From contig NW_026859721.1 of assembly GCF_026571515.1 (NCBI RefSeq), positions 248,001 to 312,000 on the forward strand: a DNA stretch of 64,000 nucleotides, read 5' to 3'. Under the pieces are notes generated by a model. The model was not told where the DNA came from and did not search any database. It saw only the letters and a list, made by a program, of their open reading frames with translations. Below are positions 22,817 through 60,356 of the stretch, piece after piece. The position numbers were made by a program, and so were the translations under genes. Source of the stretch: Ruditapes philippinarum. Lineage: Eukaryota. Every line of letters begins with the position of its first letter. Within the stretch, counting starts at the first letter, position 1.

Positions 22817-25800
22817 ATGCAATCAGTTGATATCATCAGGGTAAGAAATAATATCTAATTGCAATCATTCTTCTGTATTTTTATTTCATACTGATAACAA
22901 TATTACAATGTATATGTAACTCATGACCGGTTCGATTGGGAAAATGGAAGAGCTACCAGCTCTTTCGGACTGTTCGATTGGTCGCCTTCTATTTTCAGAA
23001 GCTGTTCTATCTATTCCACCCGATGGACAAAATATTTGGAAGAGAAAAAAAACACGTGATCAAACAGCATGACTGACAAGGATTAGGAGTAAAATAAAAC
23101 AATTTTTAATACTGCGGTTGTTACATTTTTACTTTCTTCTGATTAAGAGAATAAGTATTTTATCACAAAATCAATATAGCAAAAGTTTGTTACAATTTAT
23201 TCTTAAAAATAAGTTATCAATAGAGCTTTAAATATCTAAGAAGGTAACCATATAATACCGCAAAAACGCCATGGTATATAACAAGTATGTTTTTACCTAT
23301 ATATATAACAAGCTGACATTACTATAAATAGAAACTGATATTACACACCATAGCGAAAAAGGAAGTGTAAAATATTTGAAAAAAAAATATCGTCAAACAG
23401 AAAGAGGAAATGTTAGAAAATGGAAAAAGATTCAGGTTAGATTAAAGTTTTGAAAACAATTTTAAGTTTAATTCATGTGATTTCTATAATGTTACTTTAT
23501 GTAATGTGTACACCAGTTTATATCTGTATATTTCAATTAACTGAACTAAATCATAAGTTAAACGTGTAAGTAAACAAAGAAATTTTATATTGAAATAACC
23601 TTGAACTAATTAAACTTAATGTTATTAAACAAAAAAAAAAATATACGTTTTACTTTTAACAAAAATGTTCTATAAAACGAAATAAAAAATACAAAATTTA
23701 TTTCAACTGTAGATATTTATTTATCAGATTTTTTCAAAAGGTCATATAAATGAGGTTAAAATATAGTAACACGATAACGTGTATTCAATAGATCATTACA
23801 ATAAAACATGAAACCATGTTTTATCTATCACAATTTTATATTAAAGTAGGATTATGTTAAGATTTTTAGATATAATGTACGTGGAAAGATTATCGAAATA
23901 TTTTGTACGTTTATCAATTAACAAATATAATGAATGCTTTTAGATTATCGAATACACTGTGTGTATAGGATTACCAAATACGCTGTAAATGTATAAAGAT
24001 CATCAAGTATACTTTTAAGAAAATAATTGATTGTTACATTAAACTGAGAATCTTCGATATGTATGCTGAATAGCAGGTTTACATTCTAACGGTTGACCTT
24101 CTCGAAATATGCCATAATGTAAATATCTAAAAGTTTTCGTTCATTTTGATTAAAGTCTCCATATACAATAGTCTCAAAAAATAAATCAGGTAAGAAACGA
24201 ATTTAGCAGATCACAGATGCATAAATTCAAAAGACAGTTCATTTCAGCTTGTTTACAAGACGCTATTTAAACAGTACCCTATTATACTCTTAATTATAGA
24301 TTTCAGAATTTTGCTTGTTGGACGTACGGGGCATGGTAAAAGTTCAACTGGTAATTCGATAGTTGGGAAAGATGTATTTGAAGTATCTGCATCTTCGAGA
24401 TCAAAGACAAAGACTTGTCAGTGGTCAAATGTAAGCACTTATTGTTTGTACTGCTTAGTTCCAGAAAGAATCCGAATGTGTTTCAATTAGCTTATAGCTT
24501 CGAACCTTATAGAACTAAAATGAATTCGCTTAAACAAAAAAGAACTTTTTTTTTCTTTTCCAACGAAATAGTTTATTTTTTCTTTTATAAATATTTAAAC
24601 GACAGATTTTAGTTGTCAACTTTGTGAAAATGTTTAATCAATGTTTGTTCCTCAAAGACTTTAGGCACGTTTATTTCAAAACCACATGCATGTAGTATCT
24701 TTACTTTACTTAGATGCAGTGTGAGTGAAGGTTTTACAGAAAGTATATACGATATTAGTTCTATTATGAATTGCAACAAATTTACTTCTAAGGTAATAAA
24801 TGTGCAATTAATCATCGTTAAATTTGGTATGTTCGGACATGCAAAATACTTAAACATATTTAAATTAAGGGTAAGTGAATAACCAAAATATGTTGTTCAT
24901 GTTTTGTTTTGCAGAAATTTCAAAGGTTTGGAAAAGTTGTTGAGGTTGTTGATACACCCGGGTTGTTCGATACAGATCTTGACCAGTTAGCAGTGCACAA
25001 GGAACTGCTAAAGGCTTTAGTATTGACAACCCCAGGTTTCCATGTAATTGCTTTTGTTTTGATGAAAGGAAAATTTACAGAGGAAATACAAAAGACACAA
25101 GATCTGTTCTTCCAGTGGTTTGGCAAAGATGTAGAAAAATTTGCATGCATTATTCTCACCGACACGGACAGTGACGAAGATAAAGAAAGTTATATCAAAG
25201 ATGACCCGCATCCGAAATTAGCAGAATTGGTGCAAACATGTAATGACAATGTTGTAGCATTGAATAACAAAAACAGTGAAACGAAAAAACAAGATCAGAT
25301 AAACAAACTTTTTGAAGTAGTTGAAAAGATCAAACGTGATAATTCTGATACGCATTTTTCTAATGTCATTTTTCAATTTGCTGAGTCATATATGAAGAGC
25401 AAATATCCAAACAAGCTCACAAAAGATTCAATACGAATAATTGAACGCTTTGATTTGGAGCAATTATCCCAATGTCAGAGACATCGGCTTCAGCAATTGA
25501 TGGATATGCTCACTGAATATGACGATAGCGAGGATTTGGTTGTGGAAACGGACGTAGACTCAACTGATAATGACCAATTATTTTTAAGAAAAGCTGATGA
25601 AGAGACTGACTTTGTCAGCAGCGGAAGCAAGGGAAATCTCCAAATATTTGATAGTAAGTCAAATGAAAGGATATTAAACATACAGGACCCCGATCAAGTT
25701 TTAAGACATAAAAAGATGGTAACAGGTTCAGATGAAGTTGCCTCATCGAATGAATTTGGATATAGTTTTAACACAGCAAATACAGACGAGGTTCCCGGAA

Positions 25801-26144
25801 AAAGTTCTGAATATGTTGCAAGCAATGTCGTGCGTGATCAAATAGATGCGAAACAACATTCAACATACCAAATTGAAAGTGATGAACATTCTGCCTTAAT
25901 GCAAGGATCTTCACAATCCAAAACGGACAACAATAAATATCGTGAGAAAAAGGGCAGGTCCAGAGGAGACCGAGTAATTGATATCGAAAGTGTCAGCTAC
26001 GATGTTCCACCGTGTTCACCTTTAGATGACTATAAAGATAGAGTCAACAATGGAGAGCATGTAGAAGAAGAATTGAAAGGATTGTTGGGATATTTTAAGA
26101 AAGTTTGGAGATACTGTAAACGAAAAAGATGCATTATTTTATGA
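22817..26144 (+). CDS. GIMAP/AIG1-family GTPase copy 5 with a polybasic CaaL C-terminus (CKRKRCIIL)
   Basis: Firm exons: 24300-24430 ([22 protein letters not shown]) and 24915-26144 ([19 protein letters not shown]). Tentative 5' exons 22817-22840 (MQSVDIIR) and 24156-24189 ([11 protein letters not shown]) fit the phases. Confidence 0.85.
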
Positions 26145-29897: not shown

Positions 29898-32800
29898 ATG
29901 ACGTCACCGGGAAGAGAAGTTGTGATAAGCGGGATTTCCTGTCGTCTGCCGATGTGTGATAACATGGATGAACTGAAGGAAAATTTGCTAAATGGTGTCG
30001 ATATGATAAATCATGGGAAACAAAGGATAAATACTGGTGAGTATATCAGCTTTACAGACTTCAGCTTAATATATAGTTTAATAACAAGAAGTTACCGACC
30101 TTTTTATTATCATCATAAAATACAGGTATCAGGTACTTAAAAGGATGGCGTATTTCTTTTTACTTTGAATAAATTTGGAACTTGAAACTTGGTATCTCTT
30201 CTTAAAAACGAGAAACACGGATGAAATGAAGCAAAGTCGCTTAAATGTAAAATACGTTTATATGATATAGAGTTTCTTTCAGCGTAGCGTGTAATTTAAA
30301 AATATAATTATATCAAAATAAACTGGTGGCGTTGCCCCATTTACTTATAACATGTATAAAGTATTAATTTGAAGTATGTGTCGTTCAAACTTTATTAATG
30401 AGAAAGGTTCTGCAGTGTATTATGTTTAAAATATCTTACCTTAAAATTATAGTAACGAGAACTTACGTATACAAGGTTACAAAATAAATGTGTCAATGTT
30501 ACTCAGCGTACTAGAGTGGACCTATTCATCGTGGGATATAATTATGCTTTCATATACAATAGACTCAAATATGAATTATAGTCTCCAAACCCTTAAATTG
30601 CTTTTACTTTTGATATTTTCTCTAATACTTTAACACAAATGTAACTGCGGTAACAAGTAAACAGAAAGTTCATGTCATGGCATAAATGTAGTTTATCCAT
30701 ATTATTGATATTGTTATTGGTATACTGTTGCAGATATGTTTGCTTTGCCACCCTATGGACAAATAAAAGATCTGTCGAGGTTCGATGCAAGTTTCTTTGG
30801 CATATCCGCTGCGCAAGCAAATAAAATGGATCCTTCATTGCGGATACTTATGGAAGTTACTTATGAAGCGATTGCAGACGCAGGTACTAACGTTATATGA
30901 ACAGAGGAGATATTATTCACAAACGATATGCCAATTAAAAAAGCTTGTTATATTCTTAGTTTTTATTTGCCGTACTGAAAAGTTTATAGTATTACTCACA
31001 AATTTTTACAGACAAAATGATGACACTAGCATATTTCGATAAGGAAAATGTTAAAATGATAAGAAGATGAGAAAGCGTCACTTCTAAAATCAAACTTTCA
31101 AGTTAATCAAGCGTTTTGTAATCAAATTTTACTATCATGATTGTTCCAAGGTATTGATCCACTTGCACTACGGAAATCCGACACAGGTGTTTATGTTGGT
31201 ACTGGTCCTTCGCAGTTTCATTTTGCAATGTCGGATGACATAGACAAAATATCTGGTTATGAGATGACAGGTTCAGAACAATGCATGTTGGCAAATCGTC
31301 TTTCCAACTGGTTTGATTTTCGAGGTAATCATTTCTTAGTTTCTCTTGTAGTCGCTGTGTGTAAAAAGGTCAGATGACAACAAAAATAATGTTATACTTT
31401 ATAATTGAATTTTGTAATCCGTAATCACTGTGCAGAACTGGTCTTTTATAAAAAATAAATAAATATCAAGATAATTATTTATCTATAACATTAACCCAAA
31501 ATCTGCTGGAAGTGTTTAACTTTTGCAAGGAGTACGTAGCCAGGCCAGGCTGTAAACCCATCCTAAGAGATGAGCCTTATTTAAATTTCATTTCAAAGGT
31601 CCAAGTCTTGTTATGAACACAGCATGCTCATCCAGCCTCGTTGCACTTGATAAAGCAGTAAAGGATGTGAGACAGGGAGTATGCAGTTCTGCCATTGTAG
31701 CAGGTGTAAATATTTTATGCCATCCTGGAATTAGTAAACAGCTTCAGAAACTCGGTATGCTGTCTCCAAATGGCCGATGCGCGTCTTTTGATGAAGAAGG
31801 TAAACATTTTCTCAGCTTTTTTGACGCTATAAAGTACATTATTCTATGAATCATGTTCATTGCTTTTTTTTAATAAGTTTTACAAACAAGTTTCTAAAAT
31901 TTAGAAGATTTTGTCAAGACGCAAAAAATCGGTATCCTATCATATGCCTAACTTACGCCGATTGCTTCAGTTAAATGCAAAAACTAGAATAAGTAAGTAA
32001 TAGGAAACAAGAATGAATTGTCTCTGCAAACTCATTTCCTTAAAAATGTATCTTGCGTACATGAAAAAATTATCATTATTAATTTAACAAGAATATTAAA
32101 ACAACAATTGATGTCCGTGTCTCAGTAAGACCGCAAAACGTTTAAACACTTACTAGTACATTTTGTTTGCACAAAATGAAAACTATACTTGTATGCTATA
32201 TTGTTCAATTTATTTAGCCGACGGCTATTGTAGAAGTGAAGGAATTGTTGCAATAATTATACAAAGAAAAGAGATGACAAGAAGGATTTATTGTGAAATC
32301 GTTCACTCAAAGGTCAACAACAATGGATCTTCTTCCAATGGTAATTTTAATATTGTTGCGTTCAGTGATTTTTGTTTCATATAACAATTGCCATGAGTAA
32401 TATATTGTGAAGCAGACATGCTCTACCTATAACTGAAGCATGCAGCTTTGATGCCCTTTTTGACACCAAACATGTGTGACTTATTCCTGATAAATTCGTT
32501 GTCTAATTATGAGAACCGTGTCCATTTAGAAAGACATACTAGTAATTGTAACCAAGGTGAATATTATAAAAATTGTTACAGGCATAATATCAACATCGAA
32601 AGAAGCACAGTGCAAACTTCTTCAAGAGCTTTATTAAGAAGCCGGGTGAACCCAAACGATATGTACTATATCGAGGCACATGCCACTGGTACCCAATCTG
32701 GTGAAAAGTTTGAGGCGGAATCGATTGCTGAAATATTTTGTACACAAAAAAGTGGTCCCCTTAAAATTGGATCGGTAAAATCGAATCTCGGACATACTGA

Positions 32801-35800
32801 AAATGCATCAGGTATATTCGGGTTTCTTACTTTTATCTTTCCGGCTTTTCCTTATCAAATTAATGAATTATGAAATATACATACATTGTTATGTATTGAC
32901 ACTCGAACGATATGCAAGTATGGAAAACCACTCAAACGCTTTAATGTAATCCAGTAAAAATATATGTATTGAAAATTATGACGATTCAATAAAAAATTAC
33001 TGAACGGTAATCTTATCTGCGTACGACTCAAGACGCGGGATATATTTTCGTCGGTATAATCTTCAAACTTTTATTTTGCATTTCCTAGGCTTGGTGTCAT
33101 TAGCAAAAGTGATTGTAGCAATGGAGACAAAAATCATACCGAAAATCTTACACTTCTCTGTGCCAAACAGCAGCTTATCCGAACTCTGTAATGGGCAGCT
33201 GGAAGCCGTTCAGGAAAATCTACACTTTAAAGGAGATTACATTGGCATTAACAACTTCGGGTTCGGAGGAACAAACGCACATGTACTTCTCAAAACTCAC
33301 TGTATCGCTACACCATGTACGTTAGAAATCTCGAGGGCTAAACTTGTATTATATTCCTCAAGAGAACCAAGTTCAGTGGAAGAAACAATAGAAAAAATAG
33401 CAAAATATGACCAATATTTTCACTTACTGTTGAGGAATGCAAATCTTATGACAGGGATGGCAAAAGTTAAAGCATATTCAACAGCGGATGAGACATCATG
33501 GAAAACAATGGTGGGCTAACCATTTCAATAATTAAGTGTATACCTTAAATTAAACAAGTAGTTTAACCTATATGTTGTAAAACGCAATCCAGCACAAACC
33601 TTTTTAATGTTGAAATTTGATTGATTATTGATACTTTTATTGCTAACTTTTCTTTTCTTTTTAAATAATCGTAAATGTCCTAATTTAAATGTATTCAATT
33701 AAATTTGTCAAGGACAACCATAACTCGGAGCAGCAAGTGTGGTACGTGTTTTCTGGAATGGGAGCTCAATGGCATGGTATGGGTAAAACAATGATGGAAG
33801 TCGTTGCTTTCCGCAAATCAATTCTGAAGTCAAACATGGCCCTTCAAGAATTTGATATTGACCTTGAGGAAATCATAGAGATGGGCACATGTACTGATTA
33901 CATAGTGGACATTCCTGTTATGATTACAGCTATACAGGTAAATATGAGTGATTAAGGTAGTTGACTTCAAACGCTTGCCCCTCACCACTGTGAGTCCGAA
34001 TCCCGCCATATCTAGAAGCAATCCAGCTACCTTACGTGCGGACAATCGGGGTTTCTACTTAGGTGTCAGTTAATACCTGAAATAGTGCACGGAGGGACAT
34101 ATTCACCAGTAAAGCAGGACAATCGCCCACTATTTAATGTGCTGAGGCGACGTAAAACTCAAACAAACATACGAGTAACAAGAAACATTGAAAACATCCG
34201 ATTCATTCGGAAAAAGGTTAATTGACAACATTTTGTAAATAAATGAAAATTATAGACAACTTACACGTGGGAATCGGGGTTTTACTATTTAACTTACATG
34301 GGTGCTTTGGTTTCGTGCTGAAACAATTTAGTAAACATTGTATTAAAAATCATTGACGTGCTCTATTTACATTTTCATATAAAATTTAGCAAAATTAACA
34401 CTACTTTTTGCCACCAGTAAAGAGTCAGACCAGCCTGTACAGCTTTGCAGTATGTCCACACTCTATACTTTTGCCTGACTCTTTTTCAAATTTTCATCTT
34501 AATACCCCCAAAACTGGCACCAGTCAAGTCCAAAACGAAAGGTGGATAAGTAAGGCCATAAAAAGTAAACAGTTCAGGTGGATTGAAAATATTCATTAGT
34601 CCATTGATGTTTATATTCTTTATATTTAAGTATTACTGCATACACTATTTATATTTGTGTATAATTACTGGTTATTTCTACACTTGAGTATGATGTTTAC
34701 ATGGGAAAATATGTTCTTGTGTTCCTTTTTAAGATTGCTTTGTATGATATTTTGTGGGATATTGGGATAAAACCGGATGGTATAATTGGACATTCAGTGG
34801 GAGAACTGGCCTGTGCCTATGCAGATGGCTGTTTAACTCGTGAGGAAACACTTTATATTGCGTATAAACGGGCTTTTTGCATTCAGAACGCTGATTTGCC
34901 ACATGGGGCTATGGCTGCTATAGGTACGTCCTAACTCATCCATTAGCTATAAATTATATTTACATCAAAAAGCATAGTCCTTTTTAGTTTTGAGTCCCTT
35001 CTTTCGTGTATTTTTGTGTTGTATGCTTTAATTAATGTCAACATGTAAAGATTTAAACAAAGAAAATATATTGACTACATTCATTGACTAGATTCAATGC
35101 AAGTCATATAGAAATAACTGTTACCTGAACATGATAATTATGAAGCTGCTTTTATCACGTTTATTTTCTTTTTCGTAATTCATGTATTGCACCACAGGTT
35201 TGTCATTAGAGCAAGCAGAGTCAGTGATGCCAAAGGAAGTGACGGTTGCATGTCACAATGCACAGGATTCTGTAACAATATCCGGTAGGACATGTGCTAT
35301 AGACCAAATCATAAAGGATCTTAATGCAAAAGGTGTATTTGCAAAACATGTAAATACTAACGGCATAGCTTTTCATTCAAATGATCTACATGTGGTTGAA
35401 GAGCCATTTAGAGTGGCGATTAAACAAGTAAGTACATGTCACAAAGCAATCGTCTAGTTGCACATAATGTCATATAGAATAAAATGCATTTCTGTGTTAC
35501 AGTCGATACTATCGAATATTTTACCTTTGAGATATTTTAACTTTTGGTATGGCTAAAATGTTGCATAACAATTGGATGATTTTTGTTACAGGTTCTAAAG
35601 TCTCCGAGAATTAGAAGCAAAAAATGGATAAGCACAGTTATACCAAACTGCATGACGGAGTGTGAGGTATCCAGATATCTTACGGCTGACTATCTTACGA
35701 AGACTCTGACAAGTCCAGTCCTGTTTTATGAGGCAACACGGCAAATTCCAAATGGGGCAATCGTAATAGAAATTGCACCACATTGTTTACTACAACCACT

Positions 35801-38800
35801 GTTAAGACGATCTCTGCCAACGGATTGCTATATTTCAGGTCTCATGAAACGCGATCATGAAAACATGTCATACTTCATGTCAAGTCTTGGAAAGTGAGTA
35901 TTATAAATTCGATATGTCTTGTTCCTAAGCGTCTTTCATCCAAAAACGGCCTTCTGAATTTAAAAAAGCGTTTTTTTATATTTTGGAAAAAAAAAGACAA
36001 ATAGTTTGAAAAATAATTTAACTCTCAACATGAATATCAAAATATGATATGTCTGTATTTCACTACTTTCAGATTATTTGAAAGAGGACTTTGTTTTGAT
36101 TCAAGCCGTATAGAAGACCAAATATCATTTCCAGTCCCAACTGGCACGCCGATGTTATCGCCTGTGGTGAAATGGGATCACACTCAAACATGGGATATTC
36201 CGTCATCGGATGTATGCATTGGTATTAAGTCAAAGCGATGTTTTACATATACTATAGATATATCTGAGGGAGGTGAATACTCACATCTTCGAGATCACAC
36301 AATTAACGGACGAGTTCTCTTTCCTGCCTCTGGGTACATTTATCTCACTTGGAAGACATTTGCCACATTGTTAGGGAAAAGTTATGAATCTCAGGCCATA
36401 AAATTTATGGACGTCGAATTTCATCAAGCAATCATATTAAGAGAAGGCGACAACGGTAAATAAGAAATGTATAATGCAAATGAATTGGCTATTTTTTTTT
36501 GTTGCTATTGTTCTTGATATTTCTAAATAGTTTTCTTGATAGTCTTATATTTTTATATCAATAAGCAACAAAAGAACTTAATGACATGTTAAGATCATAG
36601 CTTGCGTTCGTGTTTAATAATTTAAAAGAGAATGATAATAATAAAAGACGCAAGGTCTTGTTAAAGTGACATAATACTCAGTTTTGTCAAGTTGGGTTTA
36701 ATTATACATACTTCAAAATATTAACTGCATTAATGACGACTGACCAAACAATTGTTAATAAGAAATGGCTAGGATAATTTATAAAAACTGCCTAAAAATA
36801 AAACGACCGTCCAACTTTTTTTCAACTGAGCTGAACCGATATTAAATTGGAAAAATGGCTAAATGTTAACTTAATTTGACTTTTATCAGTACTCTCAACA
36901 TTTACATTTTGATGGGCTTAATGTCTTTAATGAATTTGACATAGTATCTTAAAACATTTCCAAACATGACAAAACAGATGGTGAAATATTGATATCGATA
37001 AACTGTATCGTATTACCTTGTTATTCAACCTGTACAACCAGGAAACATACTTTTTTTTATCAAATTGCAGATATACGGGATACTTCATTGGAAATAGATA
37101 TATTAAAAAGTAGTGGGCGTTTTGAAGTTTCTGAAGGTGGTTCATTGGTTGCTAGTGGATACGTGAGTCAGCCTGAAACGCATGAATCTAGTCTCTTTGG
37201 ATCAACAAAAGATCTTGACTCCGAAAAAGAGTGTATAAATTTGGAGCTAGAAAAGGAAGATGTGTATAAGGAATTGTGTGTCCGAGGTTATGAATATGGG
37301 AAGAGTTTTCAGTGCATAGAATCATCAGATTTAAACGGTGGGTAGCAAAAATACAAACTAATGTTTTATTATAATGAACAAAGTACATTATACCACATTG
37401 AAACACTGCTATGCAGATATTTGTCTATATGTTTATTATTCTTACAATGCGTGTGAAAACCAAAATAATCTAGTCAAAAGATTGGTATTTACCTTTATAT
37501 AAGAAGTCTTAACTTTACATATAGGACATAATGGAACGCTGCGATGGTCTGATCGTTGGGAAATATTCTTAGACGCTATGCTACAATACCCAATACTTAG
37601 CAAACTGAAAAGAGGCTTATACCTTCCATGGAAACTAGGGGAATGCTTGATACTACCGAATATGACGAATGTGAAAGCAAACTGCACTGGTGAGAATATC
37701 TGTAACATGTTACAATATTACAGTTTTCTGTACAAATTATGATAATTGAAACCAAGTTAATGATGAAAATGTTACCAAATTAAAATTATATACTTATAGC
37801 GTATATTATATTCGTAATCCGTATTTGAAATTCCACGTGTACGGTAAAAAATCTGACGAAATGAAGGTACCCTTATTATAACTTTAATATGACACAAAGA
37901 ATTGATCAAGACATCACATGGTTTGCTTCATTTTTTAACAAGATGTGTACTTAAACCTGCCAGCATCATTTTACAGATATACCAGTACAGTTCATACCAT
38001 CTACAGACACCTGCGAATGTCAATGGGCTGCCATGCGAGGCCTGAATTACTTGCCAGTTACTTATCAAAACGAAGTTCTTCCTCCATTACTTGAGTCATA
38101 CAAATTCATAAGGTACACTTTTAACAGTTATTTTAATGAAGAAGAGAGTATTCAAGGAAATCAAAGAAAAATGTTTGAACCCAGTATGAATAGAGCAGTT
38201 GAAAATGAAGGTATAGAGATGCGAGGCGGCATGACAGATATGAAGGAGGATGACCTGAAATTTTGTTCAGAAATTGTCCTAGAAAATAGTCCAAAGGCCT
38301 TGAATATCTTAGCTATTGACAACAAAGACAAGATTCCGAGTGTCCACACATGCCTTTCACGATATCCAGATTACATGGTTAAATATTACAATTTAAAGGA
38401 CAACTTATTACAGAAATATAACATAGTACACGACGAAAACAATAAATATAGTCTCACATTCGAAGATTCATTTACATATTCGGAAATTTTCAATGAATCG
38501 AACAACTCTTTTCAATTTGTTTTGTGTCAAGACGTGGGTTATTCAGAACAAACTAGAACATACATTCACAAACATCTTTCTGAAGGTGGATTTGTTTTAT
38601 TCGAATCTGTTGAGCCCGATGTAAAAGAAGCTTTACGGAAGTTTGAAAAAGTTTTCAAAGTTGGTGATAGTTTTATTATCATATACGATTTCAAAACTGC
38701 AAGTAAAACAACTGTTTTATGTAGAAAGACGCATTTATATGACGGTTCGGAGGACAAAATAATTCAAACATCTCTTTGCAATTTTAATTGGGTCAGTGAG

Positions 38801-41800
38801 GTCAAGAAGTCGATCGTAGGCTCACAACAAAACGCGTCTGATCAAACGTTATGGTTGGTTTCTGATGAGAAGAACAGTGGATTGGTAGGATTTGTTAAGT
38901 GTCTGAAAAGTGAAAATGGCCAACACAAAATCAGGTAAATCAGAACTAAATAAGGCTCAATATGTATAATGTATATAATGCTATTAATTATTATTAAAGG
39001 AAACATACAGAAAAAATCATGGAGCAGTAACAGAAACATGCAATGTAACTTATTAATTTGGTACCTAATTATTTATCTTCTTGCTTGTATTTGCATGACA
39101 TGCACGAAAACCCCATTTGTTTTTAGCATATGCTACGACATGCATATGCATATTGAATTGTATTATTTCCCAAACATACCCATGCTATGTTATATTTCAA
39201 TAATTTGTTATGTTTGCCTTTTCATTGCAAATTGAATTGTATTATTTCCCAAACATACCCATGCTATGTTATATTTCAATAATTTGTTATGTTTGCCTTT
39301 TCATTGCAAAATATCTATCAATTAGATTCAATGTGGTATGCTATATCAATTTGTTCAAGGTGCATCATCAATCAATCAGATTCTCCATTAGGAAACAGAT
39401 TGATAACGGACGAAATTGTCGCCGCTGATTTGGTATTCAATGTCATTAATCAGGACAGAAACATAGGATCTTACAGACACATGCCGATAAAGACTCGTAT
39501 GTCATAATGTTGTTTCCAAATATATTTTTTTTACTTTAGTGTCATTAAACATATCTTCATACACATAAATGTGGTATGATGTTTCTTTTTAGCAATATTG
39601 GTGAGAAGTCAAGTTTTAGTTTATTTTACCGTAACAATCTTGCAGTCCGTATACGATAACCACCATGAATGAATAAGACTTTGATATATAAGTCATTGAT
39701 ACGTACGTTCAGTTTTGTATATTATTGAAATACTTATTTATGGATAAATGTGAACTGTATACGATACAGTCTTTTTACAATTATTTCATTTAAGAATCAA
39801 AAGTACAAACAACACATGCATATGTGCGGATACAGCAGTCCGGTAACTTGTCTAGTTTGCAATGGACACATTTACCAGAGGCAGCTGAAGGTGTTGAAAA
39901 GAATGAAATGTATACCGTTTGTTATTCGGCTTTGAATTTTCGAGATGTGATGTTGGCTACTGGAAAACTGTCTCCAGCTGCGAATCCAGGCAAGAACACA
40001 AATCCAGAACAAATGCTAGGAATGGAGTTCTCTGGTTTTAATACGCTCGGGAAACGTGTAATGGGTCTTGCTCCAGATTTAATGGTAAAATCAGTATTGT
40101 GATTTTAGTCCATACATGCTCTAATTAAGCAATCGATTGAAAACACGCTACTTACTTTACTTCATGGATAATTACCTAATCACGTTAACATTACAAAACT
40201 ACATGTTGAAAAATCATTAAATTCTGAGTTCTATCTTTGAGCTTTGGTAAGTAATGTCTGTTGTTTCAGATATGACAATGTTATAATACAACAGTGTACA
40301 ATGTATTATATTTTAAAATAGGAAATATTTTCACTTACCTGATATTTTGAAGGGTATATCTACATCGGTTTCAACAAGGAATGACTGTGTATGGCCGGTA
40401 CCGGATGAATGGACACTTGAACAAGCAGCTTCAGTTCCAATGGCATATCTCTCCGCATACTTGGCTTTGGTAATCAAGGGTAACATTGCCCAACGAGAAA
40501 GCATTCTCATCCAATCGGGTAGTGGCGGATTAGGTCAAGCAGCTATAGCTATTGCACTGAGTTATGAATGCACGGTTTTTACGACTGTTAGCACTGAAGA
40601 GAAGATGGAATTTTTATTGGCTAGATACCCAAATTTAGACAAACTCAACATCTTCAGTTCAAGAGATACAGCATTTGAACAGAAAATTATGTACAAGACA
40701 AAGGGAGCAGGTTTTTCTAAGACTATTCAATCTAATTCGGAAATCATAATTATCTTCACTTTTTGTCAACATTGTGCTGAAGATTTCTTCTGCACTGTTT
40801 CTTTACTTACTAATATTAACGAACATGGGTACATGAAAGAAGCATCATATTTATAGATACACATATCATACTTTGATATGCACTTTAGTTTTTATATATT
40901 CGTACAAATGTTATACCTAGAGGCTTACTTTTTTCTTTTTCAAAGAACTGCTTTGATTGTGGTATGGGCGTTATTTTGAATAATCAATCCTATTATTGCT
41001 GTTTAATTTCATGGTACAACCAGTGACACCACTTGATCTCTCGTCATAATATACATTTGTACAATTCTCGAAGCTATTTTTTGTATAAGCAGTAATTTTA
41101 TTAAAATACATATGAATCCATGCTGTATTCATTCCTTAAAGATTACCTTGCATACTGATCATTCTGTCCCCCTTTTTCTTTCAGGTGTAGATATAGTGTT
41201 GAACTCCTTAGCAGGAGACGTACTTCATGCAAGCGTTCGTGTGCTAAATAGCTGCGGGAGATTCTTAGAAATGGGCAAATTTGATTTATTTCAAAATTCA
41301 TCTTTAGGTAATAATATTTATTGTTACAGTCAAACGAATTCTTTGCATATTTGATATTGAAATTTCGGACAATTTCTTATAGCTTATTGATTCTTCTCTT
41401 TTCTAACGCACTGTTTTACAGGTTTTATCTTTATTTTATTTACTTTTACAATAATACAATGAAGCAATCCCAAATTGTTTGGCTTGCCAAAATGTTACTA
41501 TGATAATGTACATCTACTGCTAAAATATGATATTTCTGTATCCATCCAGGCATGCAAATGTTCTTGAAGAATGCAAGTTTCCATGGGGTTCACCTAGATT
41601 TTCTTATTTCTGAGGATACCACTGGTCAGCACATGAAACGTCTCAGTGAATGTTTCACCAAAGGAATCTCTGATGGAGTAGTAAAGCCATTAAATACTAC
41701 TGTATTTGATAAACATAATGTCGAGGATGCATTTCGTTTCATGACAAAAAGAAAACACATTGGTAAAGTGTTGATAAAGGTACTTTATACGATCAGAAAT

Positions 41801-44800
41801 ATTCGTATTCAAATTTTGTTTATTATAAGATAAGCAAACATTCTATATATGTTTAAAATAAGGCTTAGAATGTGGACTTAGACCATGCATTGTATATTAA
41901 TAAAACCTTGAATACATTCGTGCATATGTGTATTTTGAAAAACAAATGGTACAAAAACTAGTTTCATATTCAAAATTCGATATAACATGTATTAAATTTA
42001 ATAAGACTTTTATACGTTACCATCTTGCATTTTTTTCTTTAGTTAATAGATGAAAAAGAGTACTCATTGACAACACTTCCCATGATATCTGCTGAACCTA
42101 GGGTCTATTTCTCTACCTCAAAATGGTATGTCATTACCGGCGGACTTGGTGGAGTTGGTTTAGAACTGGCGGAATGGCTATCCGATAGAGGCGCTAAATT
42201 ACTGGTCTTGACCTCAAGGACAGGTGTCAAGACGGCTTATCAGAAACGCAAATTGTCATTCTTACGTGTTAGTAGCACATTTACATATATTCGTCAACTG
42301 GTTATCAGAATTAAAAAGATTATAAATTAGAAGTCCTTGTAAACATCTTTGAAGTGGACCAAGTTCTTTGTAATTAAATGTGTATATATATGCCCTAAGA
42401 CATATACGTGCATATTTTAAATTGATGATTTAAACAATACTCTGTCTTGTCATCTTTTTACTCTGTTACGCATCGGTCGAATGCTTCACTACCTTTCATT
42501 TTCTTCTTTCTTATCTGTAAAGTAACCGAAATGTATTCGCTTAGCTGATAATTGAGCGTACGTATACCTTTAACGCAATTGGTTTTCATTCCACTCTTTG
42601 GTAACTTTTTGTATATGCGTCATATTGTTAAAAGTAAAAACATATATTTGATTGGTTTTTCTATAACGACTATTTGCTTAAATTCATCAAAAAGTATCAT
42701 AATATTATATTTCTATAAAATTTGGCCTTGCTGCATTTAGAAATTAAATATATTGTTTGAAGACGACAATACTTGGTTATGGTTACAGGATAAGGGTATG
42801 GATGTCCAGGTGTCCACCAGAAATGTTTCAAAGATGACGGAAGCCGCGTGTCTTTTACATGAGTTTAGACCTTTAGGCGGAATATTCCATCTAGCAATGG
42901 TATTAACACTTTACTGTATTTTCAATCGTACAGGCTTTCACCAGAAACCATGAATTTGAAAAAGATAAAGTGTCAACAAATAATGAAACACAATTACAAT
43001 ATACCTATCAAGGATTGCTTCTTGGGTCTCTAAAATTCAATTGTTTTGAGTGAGGTGTGATAACTAGCATTGTAACATCGGCTTCCATAGCTACATAACT
43101 AGACATATCAATGTTAATCAAATGCTATCAAAATAATAGGGAAAATGAAAAGTTTGAATTCTCAATGAAATCCTTATACACTGTCCGTGGTTTTTTGTTT
43201 GTGTTTTAACATTTACAGTGATTAGAATAGAAGTTTAAAGCGTTAAAACAAATCAGAATTTCAATTCAGTTAAAGATAGTTTTAACATTTATGATATTTT
43301 AACCCCGAAGGTCTTAAAAGATGGAGTACTTGAAAACCAAGATGAGACTACGTTCAAATATGTATTCGAATCAAAGGCACAAGCAGCTATTAACCTTGAT
43401 AAGCTCACAAGACATCCATCTGAATACAGTTGCGACTGGTTTGTATGCTTCTCTTCCATTGCCTGTGGTAGGGGAAACGCTGGACAGACAAATTACGGAT
43501 ATGCTAATTCTGTTACTGAAAGTGTGTGTGAGAACAGAAAGAGGGATGGGCTTCACGGTAGTATATTATAGAACTATGTATAAGATTTAGTATAAAAAAA
43601 TAAACAAATTAACAAATGTTTTAATTGGAAGGGAAATCGATTATCCTTTTCTTGAAATATGTTTCGAAATGTATATATAAAAAAAAGGTAAACTTCAAAA
43701 ATATTGTAAATGGACATTAAAGCAAATACTAAACTAAAAATCTATTTCAGAAAGTGTAACATTTGATTTGTATCCATAATCTTCCCTAGAGTGATTATTT
43801 GTGTAAATTGTAAGGTTTGATAATCAATCATTTTGACATTTAGGGTTGGCCATTCATATTCTACCGGTATCGTTTTACAATAAAGTTTGACCATAACATT
43901 AATTATATCAGTTTTCCATTAAGATTTGACCATCTTTTTCCATCTTTTTTTCCATTTAAGGTTTAGCCATACAGTTTGGACCGATCTCTCATGTTGGTGT
44001 ATTCCATGAGACAATGAGAAATACTACATCAACCCTAGCTGGTGCAGTCCCACAAAGTATAACGTCATGCTTAGCGACACTAGAAAAACTTATGAACCAG
44101 TCAGAACCGGTTGTCTCTTGCTTTCTACAAGAGGAGGACACAAAAGAGAAAAGTGAAATAAACTCAGAAAGTAGATTGGTTTTATCAATATTTAGAATAA
44201 TAGGTACTTGATGGGTTCTTTTTTATTGATTTTCATGTAAACGTCATTCGTTTTTATATAAAAATCAAATAATTTAATTTGCTTTCTTTGTTTGATTAAT
44301 AAATGACTGGCATGTATAAACAGTTAAACACATTTTTCCAATTTGCTATGTTTCAAATAAATATGCTCATTTACATCAACTAAGATCCTAGTCCACTTTT
44401 TCTTCTTTGAATTAAAAACAAAAATAGCAACAACAAAAAATGCCCCGAGAATACGTTTTAAGAATACTATAAGTTTGAATTGAATTGCAACAAAATTATA
44501 TCGGGAAAAAATCACTTTTCACAAAATATTGTATTAAACAAGTAAAACATGTTAGGAAGAATTTCACAATAGAACACGGATAGACGGACACATTAAACCC
44601 GCACGTACTGATGTAAAAACAAAGGATGTATTAAAAGCGGCCTTCAACTTTTATTTTCTGTTGGTAAAACAAGTCTGTGTTGTTTTAAACTAGGTATCTT
44701 GGAATATTAGGAATCGAAATGTCCGCTTTACTAACTTAATTATAGAGAGCGGACCGTACGATGGGGTTTCCTTAAGGCTTATTGTTTATTATCTTATCGT

Positions 44801-45011
44801 CTGCAAATTGCATTTCCATCTTAATCCTGCAGGTATTGACGAACAAAGGCAGATTAATGTAGATAGCAAGCTGAATGAGCTAGGTCTGGATTCGCTAAAT
44901 GGTATTGAAGTAAGGCAGCTTCTAGAAAGGCATACACGCAAATCCATGTCACTACAACAGGTGCAAAATATCACCATAAAAGAGTTAAAACAACTCGCAA
45001 ATCACAGTTAG
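29898..45011 (+). CDS. Animal FAS-like polyketide synthase (KS-AT-DH-psiMT/psiKR-ER-KR-ACP, no TE), about 2,100 aa, 25 exons; KS exon 6 is disrupted as assembled
   Basis: Exons: 29898-30036, 30734-30883, 31151-31324, 31599-31799, 32218-32340, 32582-32811, 33089-33510, 33713-33937, 34734-34923, 35198-35427, 35592-35893, 36073-36455, 37071-37337, 37525-37689, 37977-38934, 39360-39496, 39795-40084, 40353-40710, 41185-41307, 41550-41779, 42043-42267, 42789-42899, 43311-43557, 43961-44203, 44833-45011. Motifs: KS TACSSS, EAHATGT, SNLGHTE; AT GHSVGE, AFHS; [20 protein letters not shown]; [25 protein letters not shown]; [22 protein letters not shown]; ACP LGLDSL. Confidence 0.9.
33950..34165 (+). 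mobile_element. Degenerate tRNA-derived SINE in PKS intron 8
   Basis: Shares GAAGC.ATCCAGCTA.CTTACG, CCTGAAATA.TGCACGGAGG and CACCAGTAAAGC with the other SINE copies. Confidence 0.6.
39152..39309. repeat. Exact 79-bp tandem duplication in PKS intron 15
   Basis: ATTGAATTGTATTATTTCCCAAAC...CATTGCAA occurs at 39152 and again at 39231. Confidence 0.9.
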
Positions 45012-45504
45012 TCCATTGTGACTGGTGAATGATTGATTATAATTGCGATTTATCTCATGTGGTATCGCAAAGCATTTGAAAATTATACTGGTATCATGTA
45101 ATTAGCCGGACACTTTTCAAATTTAAGACTGTGTCATGCCAGTACTTTAAAGAAAAAAGACAGATCACTAATTTGTAATTGATGTATAACTTAATTGATA
45201 CTTGAACAGTTTTGAAAATGGTTAAAGGGATCGTAATCCAGATTTTTTTCTGGTTTTAACCATTTTATATATTTTGCTTTGGATTTCCTTGATCTAAAAA
45301 TATAATCATGCCGATATTCAATGACCGTAACAATGGTTGTTCTGCATAGTAGACTGTAAACTATGCCTGTACATAAAGTTTGTTGTGTTGTGTTCTTTAT
45401 AACATGTTTCTTGTATCAAATATCGACAGTTCCTGTTTTTACTTAAAAAGCATAAAATAATAAAATCACAATTTACAGATTGCATTTTATAAAGCTTACA
45501 GTAT

Positions 45505-46495
45505 AAGAAGGCCTGGTGTGTTTGTAAAACATGCATGCCCCCTATCGGCGGCCAATTAGGCAAGGTAATTGTAACTGACTTTTGACCTAGTAACAAAATG
45601 ATCAATAGGGGTAATCTACTGGTCATGACTAGTCACTAGGTCATTGCGATGGTAAAGGTTGTGTGCAGGAATTTTATGACAAAGTTATAACAAATATTAC
45701 AAAATAATATATGCATAAATTTTATGAATCATGTAGGCCTCCTTAATGACAACAAATTTGTTATATTACATTAGACCTTGAAATTTGTATACCAAAAGCA
45801 TTTAAGTTTATTAAAAAATATCAACCAAGAAAACTTGAGTTGTTGAGTTATTGAATTTACCTTTTACCTACAAGGTCAATATGACCTTGATCTTTGACCC
45901 ACTGATCCCAAAATCAATAGGGGTCATCAACTTGCCAAGGCCAATGCACCTACGAAGTTTAAGGGACAACGGCCCATTGGTTGTCAAGTTATTGTTTGGA
46001 AAACGCTTTAACCAATAAGATCAATGTGACATTGACCGTTGACCCCATATCCCTAAAAAATCAATATGGGTCATCTACTAGCTAATACCAATGCACCTAT
46101 GCAGTTTGAAGGCCAAGGACCCATGGGTTGTCAAGTTATTGATCGGAAATGGTTTTTACCTACAAGGTCAATAAGACCTTGACCCCAAAATCTATTGAAG
46201 TCATCATCTATAGGCCACGATCAATGCACCTGTGAAGTTTGAAGGTCAAAGTCCCATGAGTATTTGAATTATTATTTGGAAAAAATTTCAACATTTAAAG
46301 TCAATTTGACCTTGACCTTTTACCTAAAGACCCCAAAAACAATCAGGATCATCTTCTGGTCATGAACAATCCCAATAGCAAGTTTGAAGTTCCTATGCCC
46401 ATGTGTACTTTAGTTATCGATTGGAAATCATTTGGTCTACAGACCAACGAACCAACATACAAATTACAAATGCAAAGCAATATACCCCCACTTCA
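45505..46495 (+). mobile_element. Helentron/HINE-like element with an internal tandem array
   Basis: Repeated units AAGGTCAAT.TGACCTTGA..TTGACCC...AAAATCAATAGGGGTCATC...CAATGCACCT..GAAGTTTGAAGG, a CAAC/GACC microsatellite and the end GCAAAGCAATATACCCCC. Further fragments lie at about 46650-46860. Confidence 0.65.
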
Positions 46496-47417
46496 TTGTC
46501 ATTAATTGAGGTGAAAGGGAAATTCTGCCAGTGAGTATTGCATCAATTGTTCTAAGGCTCACTTATCAATTATTGTATAGTAATAAATGTAATAGAAGTG
46601 TTATTACTAAATAATTTCACAAAACATTGACTAATGAAATTTGTATCAAGTATCACTGTGACCTTGACCTAGTGATCTCAAAATTAATAAAGGTCACCTA
46701 CTAGCCATGATGGGCAATGTCACTAGAAATAAGTTAACCTAGGCTTATTTTTTTTCAAGTTATTTTTGGAGCTAGGTTTTAAAAAACAGTGTCACTGTGA
46801 CCTTGACCTTTGTCAAAATGACCTCAAAATCAATTGGGGTCATATTCAAGCCATGGCCCTACAAAGTCACACAAACAACGACTGATGCTTTATCAGGAAA
46901 TAGATCGCACAAGGGTAACATATTGAATGAAAGACTGCCCAATCACAGTTTTCTCAATACTTTTTAAACAGGGCCATAAATTCATCCAGAGCTTAAATAA
47001 CTGAGTATTTGGCTAAGGTCTGAATTGGATTGACATAGTTACTACAAAAGTACAATACATGTATAGCAAAAATATTAACTGACCTAAAGGATTTTTAGTA
47101 ACCAAGACTTGAAATTTCACCTGTTGATTCAAATATTGAATCTGTCAAAATTTTAATTCACAGTATTCTTCCTACTTTTACGTAGGGGCATACATTTATC
47201 TAGTAATGAGTAATTAGCTAAGGTTTGAATGGATCGACTTTGTTACTACAATATAGCAGATATATTAACTGATCTGATGACTAAAAGATTTTTAGTAACC
47301 AAGACTTGAAATTTCACATTTCAATTCAAAATACAAATGTACATTAGATGTCATGGGAGACAATCACATGCAAGTCATATAATAAAATTCAATATATATT
47401 TTATTCATTCATAAACT

Positions 47418-51154
<3,737 letters not shown>

Positions 51155-51565
51155 CTCTGCCAAGTTAAGTTTGTAGTAGAAGTATACTCTGAGCTACATA
51201 TATCATAGCTGTCTCAAAGCTACCTTGGGGGTGCAGTTCCTCTGAAACAAGAAATAATATGTAAAATGTATTTATGTGATATTCAATGACAGCCCTAGAT
51301 AAAAATGCGAGACATAGGAATACATACAACCACAGTGCATAATTGGTTTATATTAGCAAGCTCGCATAGCGAGCTTTACTATAACGCAAGTACCTACTAA
51401 AAGTGATGGTTTTAAAAACTTTTGTCCGAAGTACTGAATTAACACTATGCAACTTTTAGAATTACAAGATAACAATAATAACTGAGTAATTCTGACTGAA
51501 AACTGATGCATAGACTGGTAATCCCCGCACTTCTTTGGGAACCATAATGGGATAGGGAACCAGAA

Positions 51566-53534
51566 CACGGATTTACATTACAAGGATCGGACACTTTCGT
51601 TTAGCTTAAAATCCCGTCGCGCGCGAAATTGCACATCGGATAAAGGTGGACAAAACGAGAGATGGCGTTCCGAGCAGAGTGCGAAATGTGACAGATTTTC
51701 CCAAGAGTATGTGGTCTTATTGCAGCTTTGTGAAAAATTATACAGATATGAATGTACTAATACAGTATTATTTTGTGCCACTAAAGTATTTATTATTTAT
51801 ATATGAAAATATGCTGATAGAACGCTGCAACGCTTAGATAAAAAAGTACCTAATTTAAAAAAGATTTGCCTATTGTTTAGGCTTACTCTCTACACTTTGA
51901 CGCCCTTTTACTTCAAGCACAAATTATTACCACGATTCAGATTAAGATAACTATTTTTTACATGGTTTAATGGTTCCATTGCAAAAAAATGTTTCTTGAT
52001 TGCTTAAAAACTTTTAAAGAAATTCATGTTTGAAATTTGTCTTTATTTCTGTGAATTATTTCAAATTGATTTGTACATTTTTTATTTGATTACCTGAATA
52101 TTAGTATAAATATAGTAAATATTCTACTAATTAGTGTATTAAATATATTTTCAGATCATTCTAGACAAGCGTTCATATATAGATGAATTCATTAGATTGG
52201 CAAGGAAGAAACTTTTATTGGCATACAGAACAGCTGTTTTACAATATTATTTTTTATTTTGAAACAGATTTTTTTCATAGTTATCATTCACGTCAAATGA
52301 TTTATTTGTCATATGTTTATTTTCATTTTTTTTCAAAGAAAGGACTATACAAATTTAGTTGTATATTTTCAATTTCATTTATAAATGTTAATAAAGAAAA
52401 TAGATTTACATTGTATTTATATATATCCTCTTCAGAATCATTTTCTTAACACACATACCATGGACTGTAGTTAAAGACCCCGCACATACAATATATACAT
52501 TCAAATTCTATTTGTTTTTGAAGATTGAGTGTTGCAATTATCACATGTAACCTGGTAATGAAAGTTTGAAAATAAAGTTTTTCAATTATCACTTGTTACC
52601 TGGTAATTGACCCCCTTCAATAGTAATTAAACTTCAAAGAAATTTAAGTGATGTGTTTAAAATAATCAAGTTACTTTTATTTCGCAAAATACTGACTCAA
52701 ACTGTAAAGAATTTTATTGCTTTTCTAGCGTTACATTAAAAAATATCAGAAATATCTTTCTACAGGCATTCAAATAAAAAGAATAATTAAAATATATGAG
52801 TGACATTTAAAAGGTCGGAATCGAGACAGCCACACGAGAGTAATTTACTGTAACGATGATTGCCTACTTCACTGCACCGACATTTGCAAACAGATTTACA
52901 AAAAATAATGATATAAATAATGAATGAAATTTAAATATTCTATGAATATGGCAATATTGACAATCTCGGCAATATTTTGTACTAAAAAAATGAATAAATT
53001 TTCTTCACGTGTTGAGGGATTGTAAAGCCTGCAATACATTACCCGTAAAATAATTAGTTAATATATTAGACTAAATAACCCAATAAATCCAAAATATTGC
53101 ATTTTTGATCATCTGTGAATAACTTACATCGGCTTCTTTTTTATTTTGAAATTGAATTTATTATGTTACCATAATAATAAATTTCAAATACCTGCTTTTG
53201 TAAAAAATGTAAATTTACCGCAGATTTCGTCAACTTAAATTTTTAATAGTTGTTGCGGACAGATAAACTGTACCTTTGAAAAATAAATTAGATATTTGAA
53301 TTAAACAAGTATTTTTCTTCAAAATAAACTTTAAATTTCCAAAATCGGATAATAAATGGAAAAGCTATATCATTATATGGTATTTTGTAAAGTAGATATC
53401 CGTTGCGAATGGGCATTTACGCTTAGCGCCACAAAATTATCAATCGATGTACCTTTATCGAGTGCGCAACAAGATATTTAAGCATTTATATAGGGTTAAC
53501 AGGGAGTGTCTGATCCCTGTAATGTAAATCCGTG
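51566..53534. mobile_element. Non-autonomous DNA transposon of about 1.97 kb with ~30-bp TIRs and a 7-bp TSD (P-superfamily-like), copy A
   Basis: TIRs CACGGATTTACATTACAAGGATCGGACACT ... AGTGTCTGATCCCTGTAATGTAAATCCGTG. The TSD ACCAGAA is on both sides. There is no transposase ORF. Confidence 0.85.
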
Positions 53535-60326: not shown

Positions 60327-60356
60327 TGTAAACACATAAATTTATACATGATTATA

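What the first reader, a model, noticed from the sequence alone, without database searches (positions are those of the whole stretch)
29898..45011. Thioesterase-less animal FAS-like PKS with a complete reducing set and unknown product
Seen: FAS-type domain order and motifs over 25 spliceosomal exons. The catalytic residues of KS (Cys, His, His), AT (Ser, Arg, His), DH (His, Asp), ER (Gly-rich loop, GKFD), KR (Lys, Ser, Tyr, Asn) and ACP (DSL) are present. The frame ends ...[10 protein letters not shown] immediately after the ACP. I see no TE-like (GxSxG) exon before the convergent C1orf53 gene, and the psiMT region (exon 15) is short and very diverged. Established: canonical animal FASN ends in a TE, and FAS-like PKSs (AFPKs) of molluscs and arthropods make specialised lipids and polyketides. 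Inference: this is not housekeeping FASN but a secondary-metabolism synthase whose reduced chain must be off-loaded in trans (acyltransferase, reductase or standalone TE) or by cyclisation. It is the best candidate here for an undescribed pathway. Caveat: CAC A|GTTAGT at the stop resembles a donor site, so a distant TE exon cannot be fully excluded.
Basis: partly seen in the sequence, partly recalled or inferred. Interest (0 to 1): 0.78.

Follow-up and report, generated by a model that had tools for sequence, protein, structure and literature searches.

The report
Clam fatty-acid-synthase copy without release domain
This clam gene is an old, strongly diverged copy of the fatty acid synthase gene that has every chain-building part but no built-in release part, and in this assembly it is also cut short by a stop codon and a frameshift, so it is an interesting but not unprecedented enzyme gene that may not even be working here.

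Summary
The described gene is real. It has 25 GT-AG exons (29898-45011, + strand). The stop comes one residue after the ACP match.

No thioesterase is found in cis. A TE profile that finds 5 of 5 TE exons of the clam's own FASN finds nothing in the window or the next 10 kb.

The genome is the annotated Ruditapes philippinarum assembly. A separate TE-bearing FASN lies on other contigs, so this is a paralogue.

It is 48% identical to that FASN. It sits on a very long branch beside bivalve FAS. It resembles human FAS more than the sea-slug AFPKs EcPKS1/2.

The finding did not report one defect. KS exon 6, read from its homology-supported acceptor, runs into a TAA (32635-32637), and one base is missing nine bases later. 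A relative's exon reads straight through. The gene is therefore either a freshly disabled allele or locally mis-assembled.

TE-less FAS-like synthases of molluscs are already published, though only for heterobranch gastropods. I rate this a new member of a known kind, of moderate interest. The scan had already noted another TE-less FAS copy on other DNA of this genome.

The parts
29898..30036 (+). exon 1, start ATG, KS N-terminus
   Evidence: Pfam PF00109; donor CTG|GTGAGT
30734..32340 (+). exons 2-5 (30734-30883, 31151-31324, 31599-31799, 32218-32340): KS N-terminal half with the active-site Cys in exon 4
   Evidence: Pfam PF00109; tblastn; splice pairs
32582..32811 (+). exon 6, KS C-terminal half with both catalytic His. 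Broken: TAA at 32635-32637, and one base is missing at 32646 relative to the orthologous reading. The best-scoring in-frame alternative is an acceptor that starts the exon at 32530.
   Evidence: intact relative P0177; clam FASN reads colinearly in the first frame
33089..33510 (+). exon 7, end of KS plus KS-AT linker
   Evidence: PF16197, 70 bits; boundaries read
33713..35893 (+). exons 8-11 (33713-33937, 34734-34923, 35198-35427, 35592-35893): acyltransferase with GHS, Arg and His
   Evidence: PF00698 in four pieces covering profile 1-308; splice pairs
36073..37689 (+). exons 12-14 (36073-36455, 37071-37337, 37525-37689): dehydratase with His (exon 12) and Asp (exon 14)
   Evidence: PF21089, PF14765; PDB alignment to pig FAS; translation
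38007..39496 (+). exon 15 (acceptor uncertain, 38007 or 38058, to 38934) and exon 16 (39399-39496): short diverged pseudo-methyltransferase plus pseudo-KR
   Evidence: PF21149; weak match to Drosophila FAS modifying region, E 1.5e-4; 29% identity to clam FASN
39795..41779 (+). exons 17-20 (39795-40084, 40353-40710, 41185-41307, 41550-41779): enoylreductase with Gly loop and GKFD
   Evidence: 131 bits to the human FAS ER
42043..44203 (+). exons 21-24 (42043-42267, 42789-42899, 43311-43557, 43961-44203): ketoreductase with NADPH loop, Lys, Ser, Tyr and Asn
   Evidence: PF08659; frame found; 79 bits to the human FAS KR
44833..45011 (+). exon 25: ACP with the DSL serine, stop TAG at 45009-45011
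   Evidence: PF00550; same C-terminus in relative P0176
45459..45464 (+). first AATAAA after the stop, a possible poly(A) signal (inferred only)

Best explanation
This is a divergent, intron-rich paralogue of the molluscan type I fatty acid synthase in the Manila clam. It would encode about 2,060 residues: KS-AT-DH-psiMT-psiKR-ER-KR-ACP. It ends right after the carrier domain, with no thioesterase in cis.

Shown: the architecture, the catalytic motifs, the absence of a TE, the existence of a separate TE-bearing FASN, and intact orthologous exons in at least two other unnamed organisms.

Inferred: an intact enzyme would work iteratively like FAS and build a fully reduced (saturated) acyl chain on its own ACP. 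It would need a partner to release that chain. One candidate is the standalone type II thioesterase gene found on contig C15390; an acyltransferase or a reductase are alternatives.

In this assembly the KS exon 6 carries an in-frame TAA and a one-base loss. As assembled, the gene therefore cannot make a normal KS. Whether this is a real, recent null allele or a local assembly fault is open; I put it at roughly even odds.
For: Architecture and motifs.

No TE:
- tblastn with the five TE-bearing exons of the clam's own FASN matches only the ACP.
- A 7-sequence TE profile finds 5 of 5 control exons (E 1e-11 to 1e-43). It finds nothing among 4,121 six-frame ORFs of the window (minus the barred places) and the next 10 kb; best E is 9.6.
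- The whole-genome PF00975 search gave 5 matches, none on C8208.
- A convergent DUF5522 gene starts about 4.9 kb downstream.
- The own FASN has no intron at the ACP/TE junction.
- Relative P0176 ends at the same residue.
- AATAAA lies 448 nt after the stop.

Paralogue, not FASN:
- PF16197 gives 15 loci in the genome. This one scores 70 bits against 106-110 for the FASN copies.
- Identity to the own FASN is 873 of 1814 aligned residues, 48.1%.
- P0212, named FAS-like of R. philippinarum, matches C2933 at 99-100% in most exons. Its recorded contig length, 126,740, equals that of C2933.

An old, maintained family:
- Exon-7 orthologues P0001 and P0151 (61% identity by phmmer, 58-59% by BLASTP) form a 100/100 clade with it on a branch of 1.99.
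- 24 of 25 exons are open and carry the catalytic residues.

FAS-like chemistry: bit scores against human FAS versus the better of EcPKS1/2 are 57.5 vs 52.3 (KS-linker), 131 vs 96 (ER), 79 vs 49 (KR) and 100 vs 78 (DH).

Trans thioesterase candidate: the C15390 gene starts with Met, and PF00975 covers profile positions 2-221 over three exons.
Against: - Exon 6 has a stop and a frameshift. The best in-frame rescue found (exon start 32530; one search lists 32 in-frame combinations, e.g. also 32629) would replace a conserved KS segment with unrelated residues.
No run that holds the stretch is on record as RNA, though run X1 holds 0.25 of the words, roughly the exon share.
- Against the relative, exon 6 coding residues differ at 13 of 78 positions. 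The intron read-through next to it differs at 4 of 27, so this exon shows no clear sign of constraint. The ACP exon differs at 5 of 58.
- No full-length orthologue appeared among 1.84 billion representative proteins, although this assembly is NCBI-annotated. This is compatible with the locus being annotated as a pseudogene.
- No AFPK reference sequences other than the two in the PDB could be compared.
- The link to the C15390 thioesterase is pure inference.
Confidence: 0.6

Rival explanations
1. It is a recently dead gene. The TE-less paralogue was functional in the ancestor, and perhaps still is in relatives. In this clam it is a pseudogene or a null allele, ended by the TAA at about residue 290.
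For: - The TAA at 32635-32637 lies where the relative has Glu and the clam FASN has Ser, and one base is lost nine bases later.
- A base substitution is not the usual kind of assembly fault.
- No annotated protein of this locus turned up.
- Coding and adjacent intron divergence from the relative are similar in exon 6.
Against: - All other 24 exons are open with their catalytic residues intact, so any decay is very recent.
- The same assembly shows several frame changes in the large exon of one FASN copy (C11173), while the other copy (C2933) is clean. Local faults or damaged haplotypes therefore occur in it.
- Only one copy of the exon exists in the assembly for comparison.
Confidence: 0.4
2. 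A thioesterase or other release domain is spliced on from a distant exon, through the donor-like GTTAGT at the stop (exon would end at 45006, phase 1).
For: GTTAGT is a donor actually used by intron 21 of this gene. No transcript data could be obtained.
Against: - No TE-like ORF was found in 19 kb downstream plus 10 kb more, or anywhere else in the window.
- Pfam found nothing above its cut-off in six open frames of 45.3-49.5 kb, five on the + strand and one on the - strand.
- A convergent gene occupies 49.9-51.2 kb.
- The stop is kept in the relative.
- FASN has no intron at this position.
- The 40 barred bases at 48366-48405 were not examined. They are too short to hold a domain.
Confidence: 0.07
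3. It is a member of one of the published TE-less AFPK clades and makes a polyketide (a partly reduced or branched chain), not a fatty acid.
For: - It is TE-less, intron-rich and has a large psiMT exon, as described for AFPK genes (PMC10764717, section 8 read).
- It lies outside the bivalve FAS clade on a long branch.
Against: - The paper says mo-clades 1-3 are restricted to Heterobranchia. Mo-clade 4, found in all mollusc classes, has a TE and no recognisable middle domains. Here DH, ER and KR are all recognisable and the TE is absent.
- Scores against EcPKS1/2 are lower than against FAS in all four exons tested.
- The reducing residues are all present.
- The paper's supplementary trees and sequence lists were not open to me.
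Confidence: 0.15

Closest known systems
[quoted passage not shown]
   Same: Same domain order up to the ACP, same catalytic motifs, a dense intron pattern with one large psiMT exon, and an ER/KR/DH closest to FAS among solved structures.
   Different: No TE: FAS proteins carry 298-314 more residues. Identity to the clam FASN is only 48%, less than clam FASN shares with a bumblebee FAS (55%). The psiMT exon is about 110 codons shorter.
Animal FAS-like PKSs (AFPKs) of molluscs, mo-clades 1-3, including EcPKS1/EcPKS2 of Elysia (PMC10764717; PDB 9cq1, 9ctk)
   Same: FAS-derived, TE-less, intron-rich, release mechanism unknown.
   Different: Those clades are reported only from heterobranch gastropods. 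The EcPKS enzymes score lower than FAS against this gene in all four exons tested. Here nothing suggests incomplete reduction.
TE-less FAS duplicates of venerid clams: Mercenaria FAS-like P0231 (2260 aa) and P0233 (2062 aa), and the inverted copy beside the clam FASN on C11173 (earlier finding s1-803735)
   Same: Bivalve FAS paralogues that stop 27-30 residues after the ACP and have no PF00975.
   Different: Those are recent copies: they sit inside the bivalve FAS clade and are 75-76% identical to Mya FAS in the KS. This gene lies outside that clade on a long branch, so it is a separate and older loss of the TE.

Membership tests
Canonical animal FASN | C-terminal thioesterase domain (PF00975) after the ACP | tested here: not met
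Canonical animal FASN | KS-AT-DH-psiMT-psiKR-ER-KR-ACP order with catalytic residues | tested here: met
   The residue roles are recalled from mammalian FAS literature.
Canonical animal FASN | Orthology to the species' housekeeping FASN | tested here: not met
   A separate FASN lies on C2933/C11173. Identity is 48%. The gene falls outside the bivalve FAS clade in the exon-7 tree.
AFPK (animal FAS-like PKS) in the sense of PMC10764717 | KS outside the canonical FAS and PKS clades but nearer to FAS | tested here: inconclusive
   Only single-exon trees were made. In the exon-7 tree the gene is outside bivalve FAS (91/91) but inside a 95/92 clade together with it. Of 14 quick per-exon trees, 7 place it in or next to bivalve FAS and 1 places it with PKS.
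AFPK (animal FAS-like PKS) in the sense of PMC10764717 | High intron density with a large psiMT exon | tested here: met
   25 exons; exon 15 is about 0.9 kb
AFPK mo-clade 1 (EcPKS1/2 type) | Closest similarity to EcPKS1/2 | tested here: not met
   Human FAS scores higher in 4 of 4 exons
AFPK mo-clade 4 (the only AFPK clade reported in bivalves) | KS-AT...TE with an unrecognisable middle region | tested here: not met
   The middle domains are all recognised by Pfam and the TE is absent.
AFPK (any clade) | Product is a polyketide rather than a saturated fatty acid | not testable with these tools
   Needs expression and product analysis

The most novel reading that the evidence does not exclude
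The stop and frameshift are assembly faults or a rare allele, and venerid clams have a working, old, TE-less but fully reducing FAS paralogue. That would be a bivalve lineage of FAS-like megasynthases outside the published heterobranch AFPK clades. It would hand a saturated acyl chain directly to a dedicated partner, such as the standalone type II thioesterase, an acyltransferase or a reductase, to make a specialised lipid.
Probability: 0.3. Interest if true: 0.6.

Novelty: new member of a known kind. Interest (0 to 1): 0.38.

Why it matters
TE-less FAS-like synthases are the bridge between animal lipid and polyketide metabolism, and how they release their products is an open question (PMC10764717). 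They have been described only in shell-less or thin-shelled gastropods.

A bivalve lineage that keeps the whole reducing set would extend their range. It would also offer a simpler case for finding the release partner, since the expected product is a plain saturated chain. With the recent TE-less FAS copies in Mercenaria and beside this clam's FASN, it would show that loss of the TE recurs in clam FAS duplicates.

The value is limited for three reasons: the gene is interrupted in this assembly, I have no expression data, and the general kind is already in print.

Tried and rejected
No read evidence exists.
- Full-length relatives: the one search of 1.84 billion representatives, run with exon 7, was swamped by multi-module bacterial PKSs. 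It gave only one close hit, an exon-sized fragment.
- The search with Mya FAS (KS region) was swamped in the same way. It yielded 9 animal or FAS-like rows among the 120 listed.
Selection could only be judged crudely from protein fragments, and the result is inconclusive.
- Haplotig check for exon 6: only the window's own copy exists in the assembly.
- Per-exon trees are too short to resolve the position, so I use them only as a tally.
- Housekeeping FASN was considered and rejected (see membership test). A bacterial or contaminant origin was also rejected, on the spliceosomal introns and on neighbours typical of bivalves.
- Literature: three searches found no paper on a TE-less FAS-like gene in bivalves. 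I read passages and section 8 of PMC10764717 and passages of PMC11524194. The other papers were seen only as listings. Supplements, which hold the AFPK trees and sequence lists, were not open, and they could already contain bivalve sequences of this kind.
There is therefore no full-length search, fold or KS-wide tree.
Full report
WHAT IS THERE

On the + strand between 29898 and 45011 lies a 25-exon gene in AT-rich (about 33% G+C) animal DNA.

Pfam recognises, in this order:
- ketoacyl-synt N and C and the KS C-terminal extension (exons 1-7)
- Acyl_transf_1 in four pieces covering profile positions 1-308 (exons 8-11)
- the PKS dehydratase N and C parts (exons 12-13)
- FAS pseudo-KR (end of exon 15 and exon 16)
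- zinc-type dehydrogenase, i.e. ER (exons 18-20)
- KR (exons 21-22)
- PP-binding (exon 25)

The KR exon with the catalytic Lys, Ser, Tyr and Asn lies at 43311-43557, in a frame that the ATG-based ORF list hid. tblastn with a bumblebee and a centipede FAS is colinear from residue 31 to 2094 of 2392. The last ~300 residues, the thioesterase, are unmatched. In-frame GT-AG pairs that agree with the homology exist for every intron except intron 5.

The ER, KR and DH exons align residue by residue with solved FAS structures. The roles I give to those residues are recalled from the mammalian FAS literature.

Exon 15 matches only the end of the pseudo-methyltransferase and the pseudo-KR of Drosophila FAS (E 1.5e-4). 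It is 29% identical to the clam FASN and about 110 codons shorter.

THE BREAK THE FINDING DID NOT DESCRIBE

Exon 5 ends at 32340 in phase 1. The acceptor that fits homology is the AG at 32580-32581. From there the frame gives 18 residues colinear with the clam FASN and with a relative's exon. It then meets TAA at 32635-32637, continues for three more homologous codons, and after 32646 the homologous reading is in another frame. One base is missing relative to the relative's reading.

The relative's exon (P0177, 105 aa, from a JGI contig) reads straight through, with Glu where the stop is. The best-scoring in-frame alternative is an upstream acceptor that starts the exon at 32530 (other in-frame pairs exist, e.g. 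32629). It would replace a conserved KS segment with unrelated residues.

As assembled, then, the gene cannot give a normal KS. I could not decide whether the fault is real:
- The assembly holds only this one copy of the exon.
- In the same assembly, one FASN copy (C11173) shows several frame changes in its large exon against the annotated protein, while the copy on C2933 is clean. Local faults or damaged haplotypes therefore exist.
- A substitution to TAA is not a typical assembly error.

NO THIOESTERASE IN CIS

The frame stops at TAG 45009-45011, one residue after the ACP alignment ends. TE-bearing FAS proteins go on for 298-314 residues from that point.

- The clam's own FASN (C11173) has ACP, linker and the start of the TE in one exon, followed by four further TE exons.
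- Used as separate queries, these five exons hit only the ACP in 44600-64000 and in the next 10 kb of the contig.
- A profile of seven FAS TE domains finds all five control exons (E 1e-11 to 1e-43). It finds nothing among 4,121 six-frame ORFs of the whole window plus those 10 kb; best E is 9.6.
- Pfam finds nothing above its cut-off in six open frames downstream of the stop, between 45.3 and 49.5 kb.
- A convergent DUF5522 gene occupies 49.9-51.2 kb.
- The first AATAAA is at 45459.
- A relative's last exon (P0176, 59 of 65 aligned residues identical) ends at the same residue.

The donor-like GTTAGT at the stop is a hexamer that intron 21 really uses. Only transcripts can close that door, but everything else speaks against a hidden exon.

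WHOSE GENE, AND WHICH FAMILY

A protein named 'fatty acid synthase-like [Ruditapes philippinarum]' (P0212, 2552 aa, with PF00975) lies on a contig of 126,740 bp. That is the length of contig C2933 of this genome, and it matches C2933 at 99-100% in most exons. The window therefore comes from the annotated Manila clam assembly.

The genome has 15 KS-linker loci:
- three FASN-type loci at 106-110 bits (C2933, and two on C11173, one of them the inverted TE-less copy already noted by the scan)
- this gene at 70 bits
- eleven PKS-type loci, nine of them with open frames of 532 to 2,370 residues

This gene is 48.1% identical to the clam FASN (873 of 1814 aligned) and 44.3% identical to the bumblebee FAS. 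The clam FASN is 55.1% identical to the bumblebee FAS and 64.5% to a freshwater mussel FAS.

In a careful tree of exon 7, this gene joins two exon-sized fragments from ENA assemblies (P0001, P0151; 61% identity by phmmer, 58-59% by BLASTP) with 100/100 support, on a branch of 1.99. The group lies outside the bivalve FAS clade (91/91) but inside a 95/92 clade with it, apart from the arthropod FAS sequences. The tool warns about long branches.

Fourteen quick single-exon trees are noisy. Seven put the gene in or next to bivalve FAS, one puts it with the PKS outgroup, and the rest place it at the base of the FAS group or with single arthropod rows.

Against solved structures, human FAS beats the sea-slug AFPKs EcPKS1/2 in all four exons tried: 57.5 vs 52.3, 131 vs 96, 79 vs 49 and 100 vs 78 bits.

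I read this as an old, fast-evolving offshoot of the molluscan FAS line that kept FAS-type reducing chemistry.

WHAT IS KNOWN

Lin et al. 2024 (PMC10764717; passages and section 8 read) state:
- All animal FAS have a TE.
- Mollusc AFPK mo-clades 1-3 lack it, and their off-loading is mostly unknown.
- Those clades are restricted to Heterobranchia.
- Mo-clade 4, found in all mollusc classes, shows only KS-AT-TE.
- FAS and AFPK genes are intron-dense with a large psiMT exon.

This gene fits the general picture but none of the described clades. Three literature searches found nothing on bivalve TE-less FAS-like genes.

Mercenaria has two annotated FAS-like proteins without PF00975 that end 27-30 residues after the ACP. 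They sit inside the bivalve FAS clade, so they are recent and separate losses.

HOW IT WOULD WORK

This part is inferred. With KS, AT (Ser, Arg and His as in the malonyl/acetyl transferase of FAS), DH, ER and KR intact and no active methyltransferase, an intact enzyme should elongate and fully reduce a chain on its ACP. Without a TE, it must be unloaded in trans.

The genome holds a standalone type II thioesterase gene on C15390. It starts with Met, and PF00975 covers profile positions 2-221 over three exons. It is a candidate partner, but nothing links the two genes.

WEIGHING

- The family looks maintained: open orthologous exons in two other sources, and 24 open exons with catalytic residues despite about 50% divergence from FASN.
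- The copy in this assembly is broken at one spot.
- No full-length protein of this family appeared among 1.84 billion representatives, although this assembly is annotated.
- Exon 6 differs from the relative about as much in coding residues (13 of 78) as in the intron read-through beside it (4 of 27). The ACP exon differs at 5 of 58.

I therefore give about 0.6 to 'TE-less FAS paralogue of a functional family, state of this copy open' and 0.4 to 'dead here'. These two overlap on the question of architecture.

VERDICT

This is a new member of a known kind, and its interest is moderate.

Noticed in passing
window 9025-9972 (-), 13936-14872 (-), 16643-18178 (-), 24909-26144 (+): A cluster of four long ORFs with AIG1/GIMAP-like GTPase motifs lies upstream of the synthase gene. 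I recognised the motifs by eye and did not search them.
   Followed up: no
window 45861-46184, with weaker copies to about 47000: A 147-bp tandem repeat (2.2 copies, 77% matches) lies just downstream of the gene's likely 3' end. Its translated copies gave no Pfam hit.
   Followed up: partly
G000 contig C15390, about 216686-219554 (-) (locus L024): A standalone type II thioesterase gene. It starts with Met, and PF00975 covers profile positions 2-221 over three exons, with a GHSLG serine motif. It is a possible trans-acting release enzyme for TE-less synthases.
   Followed up: partly
G000 contig C11173 (locus L022:3650-4930) against contig C2933 (locus L027:6402-7655): The large psiMT exon of the FASN copy on C11173 changes frame several times against the annotated clam FAS protein. 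The copy on C2933 is in one frame at 98.8% identity. This is either local assembly faults or a damaged second copy or haplotype.
   Followed up: partly
G000 contigs C8002, C14781, C3460 (two loci), C15626, C13765, C10351, C7609, C7836, C12144, C12751: Eleven further KS-linker loci of PKS type. Nine have open frames of 532 to 2,370 residues around the match, so they are intron-poor animal PKS genes.
   Followed up: no
proteins P0231 and P0233 (Mercenaria mercenaria): Two annotated FAS-like proteins of another venerid clam lack PF00975 and end 27-30 residues after the ACP. They sit inside the bivalve FAS clade, so TE loss recurs in clam FAS duplicates.
   Followed up: partly
window 49929-50114 and 50564-51163 (-): A convergent gene with a DUF5522 domain. 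By my recollection this is the family of human C1orf53. Its larger exon has only a weak DUF7496 match.
   Followed up: partly
window 51578-52449 and 57342-59163: Two pairs of near-identical ORFs about 6.8 kb apart suggest a dispersed or segmental repeat downstream.
   Followed up: no
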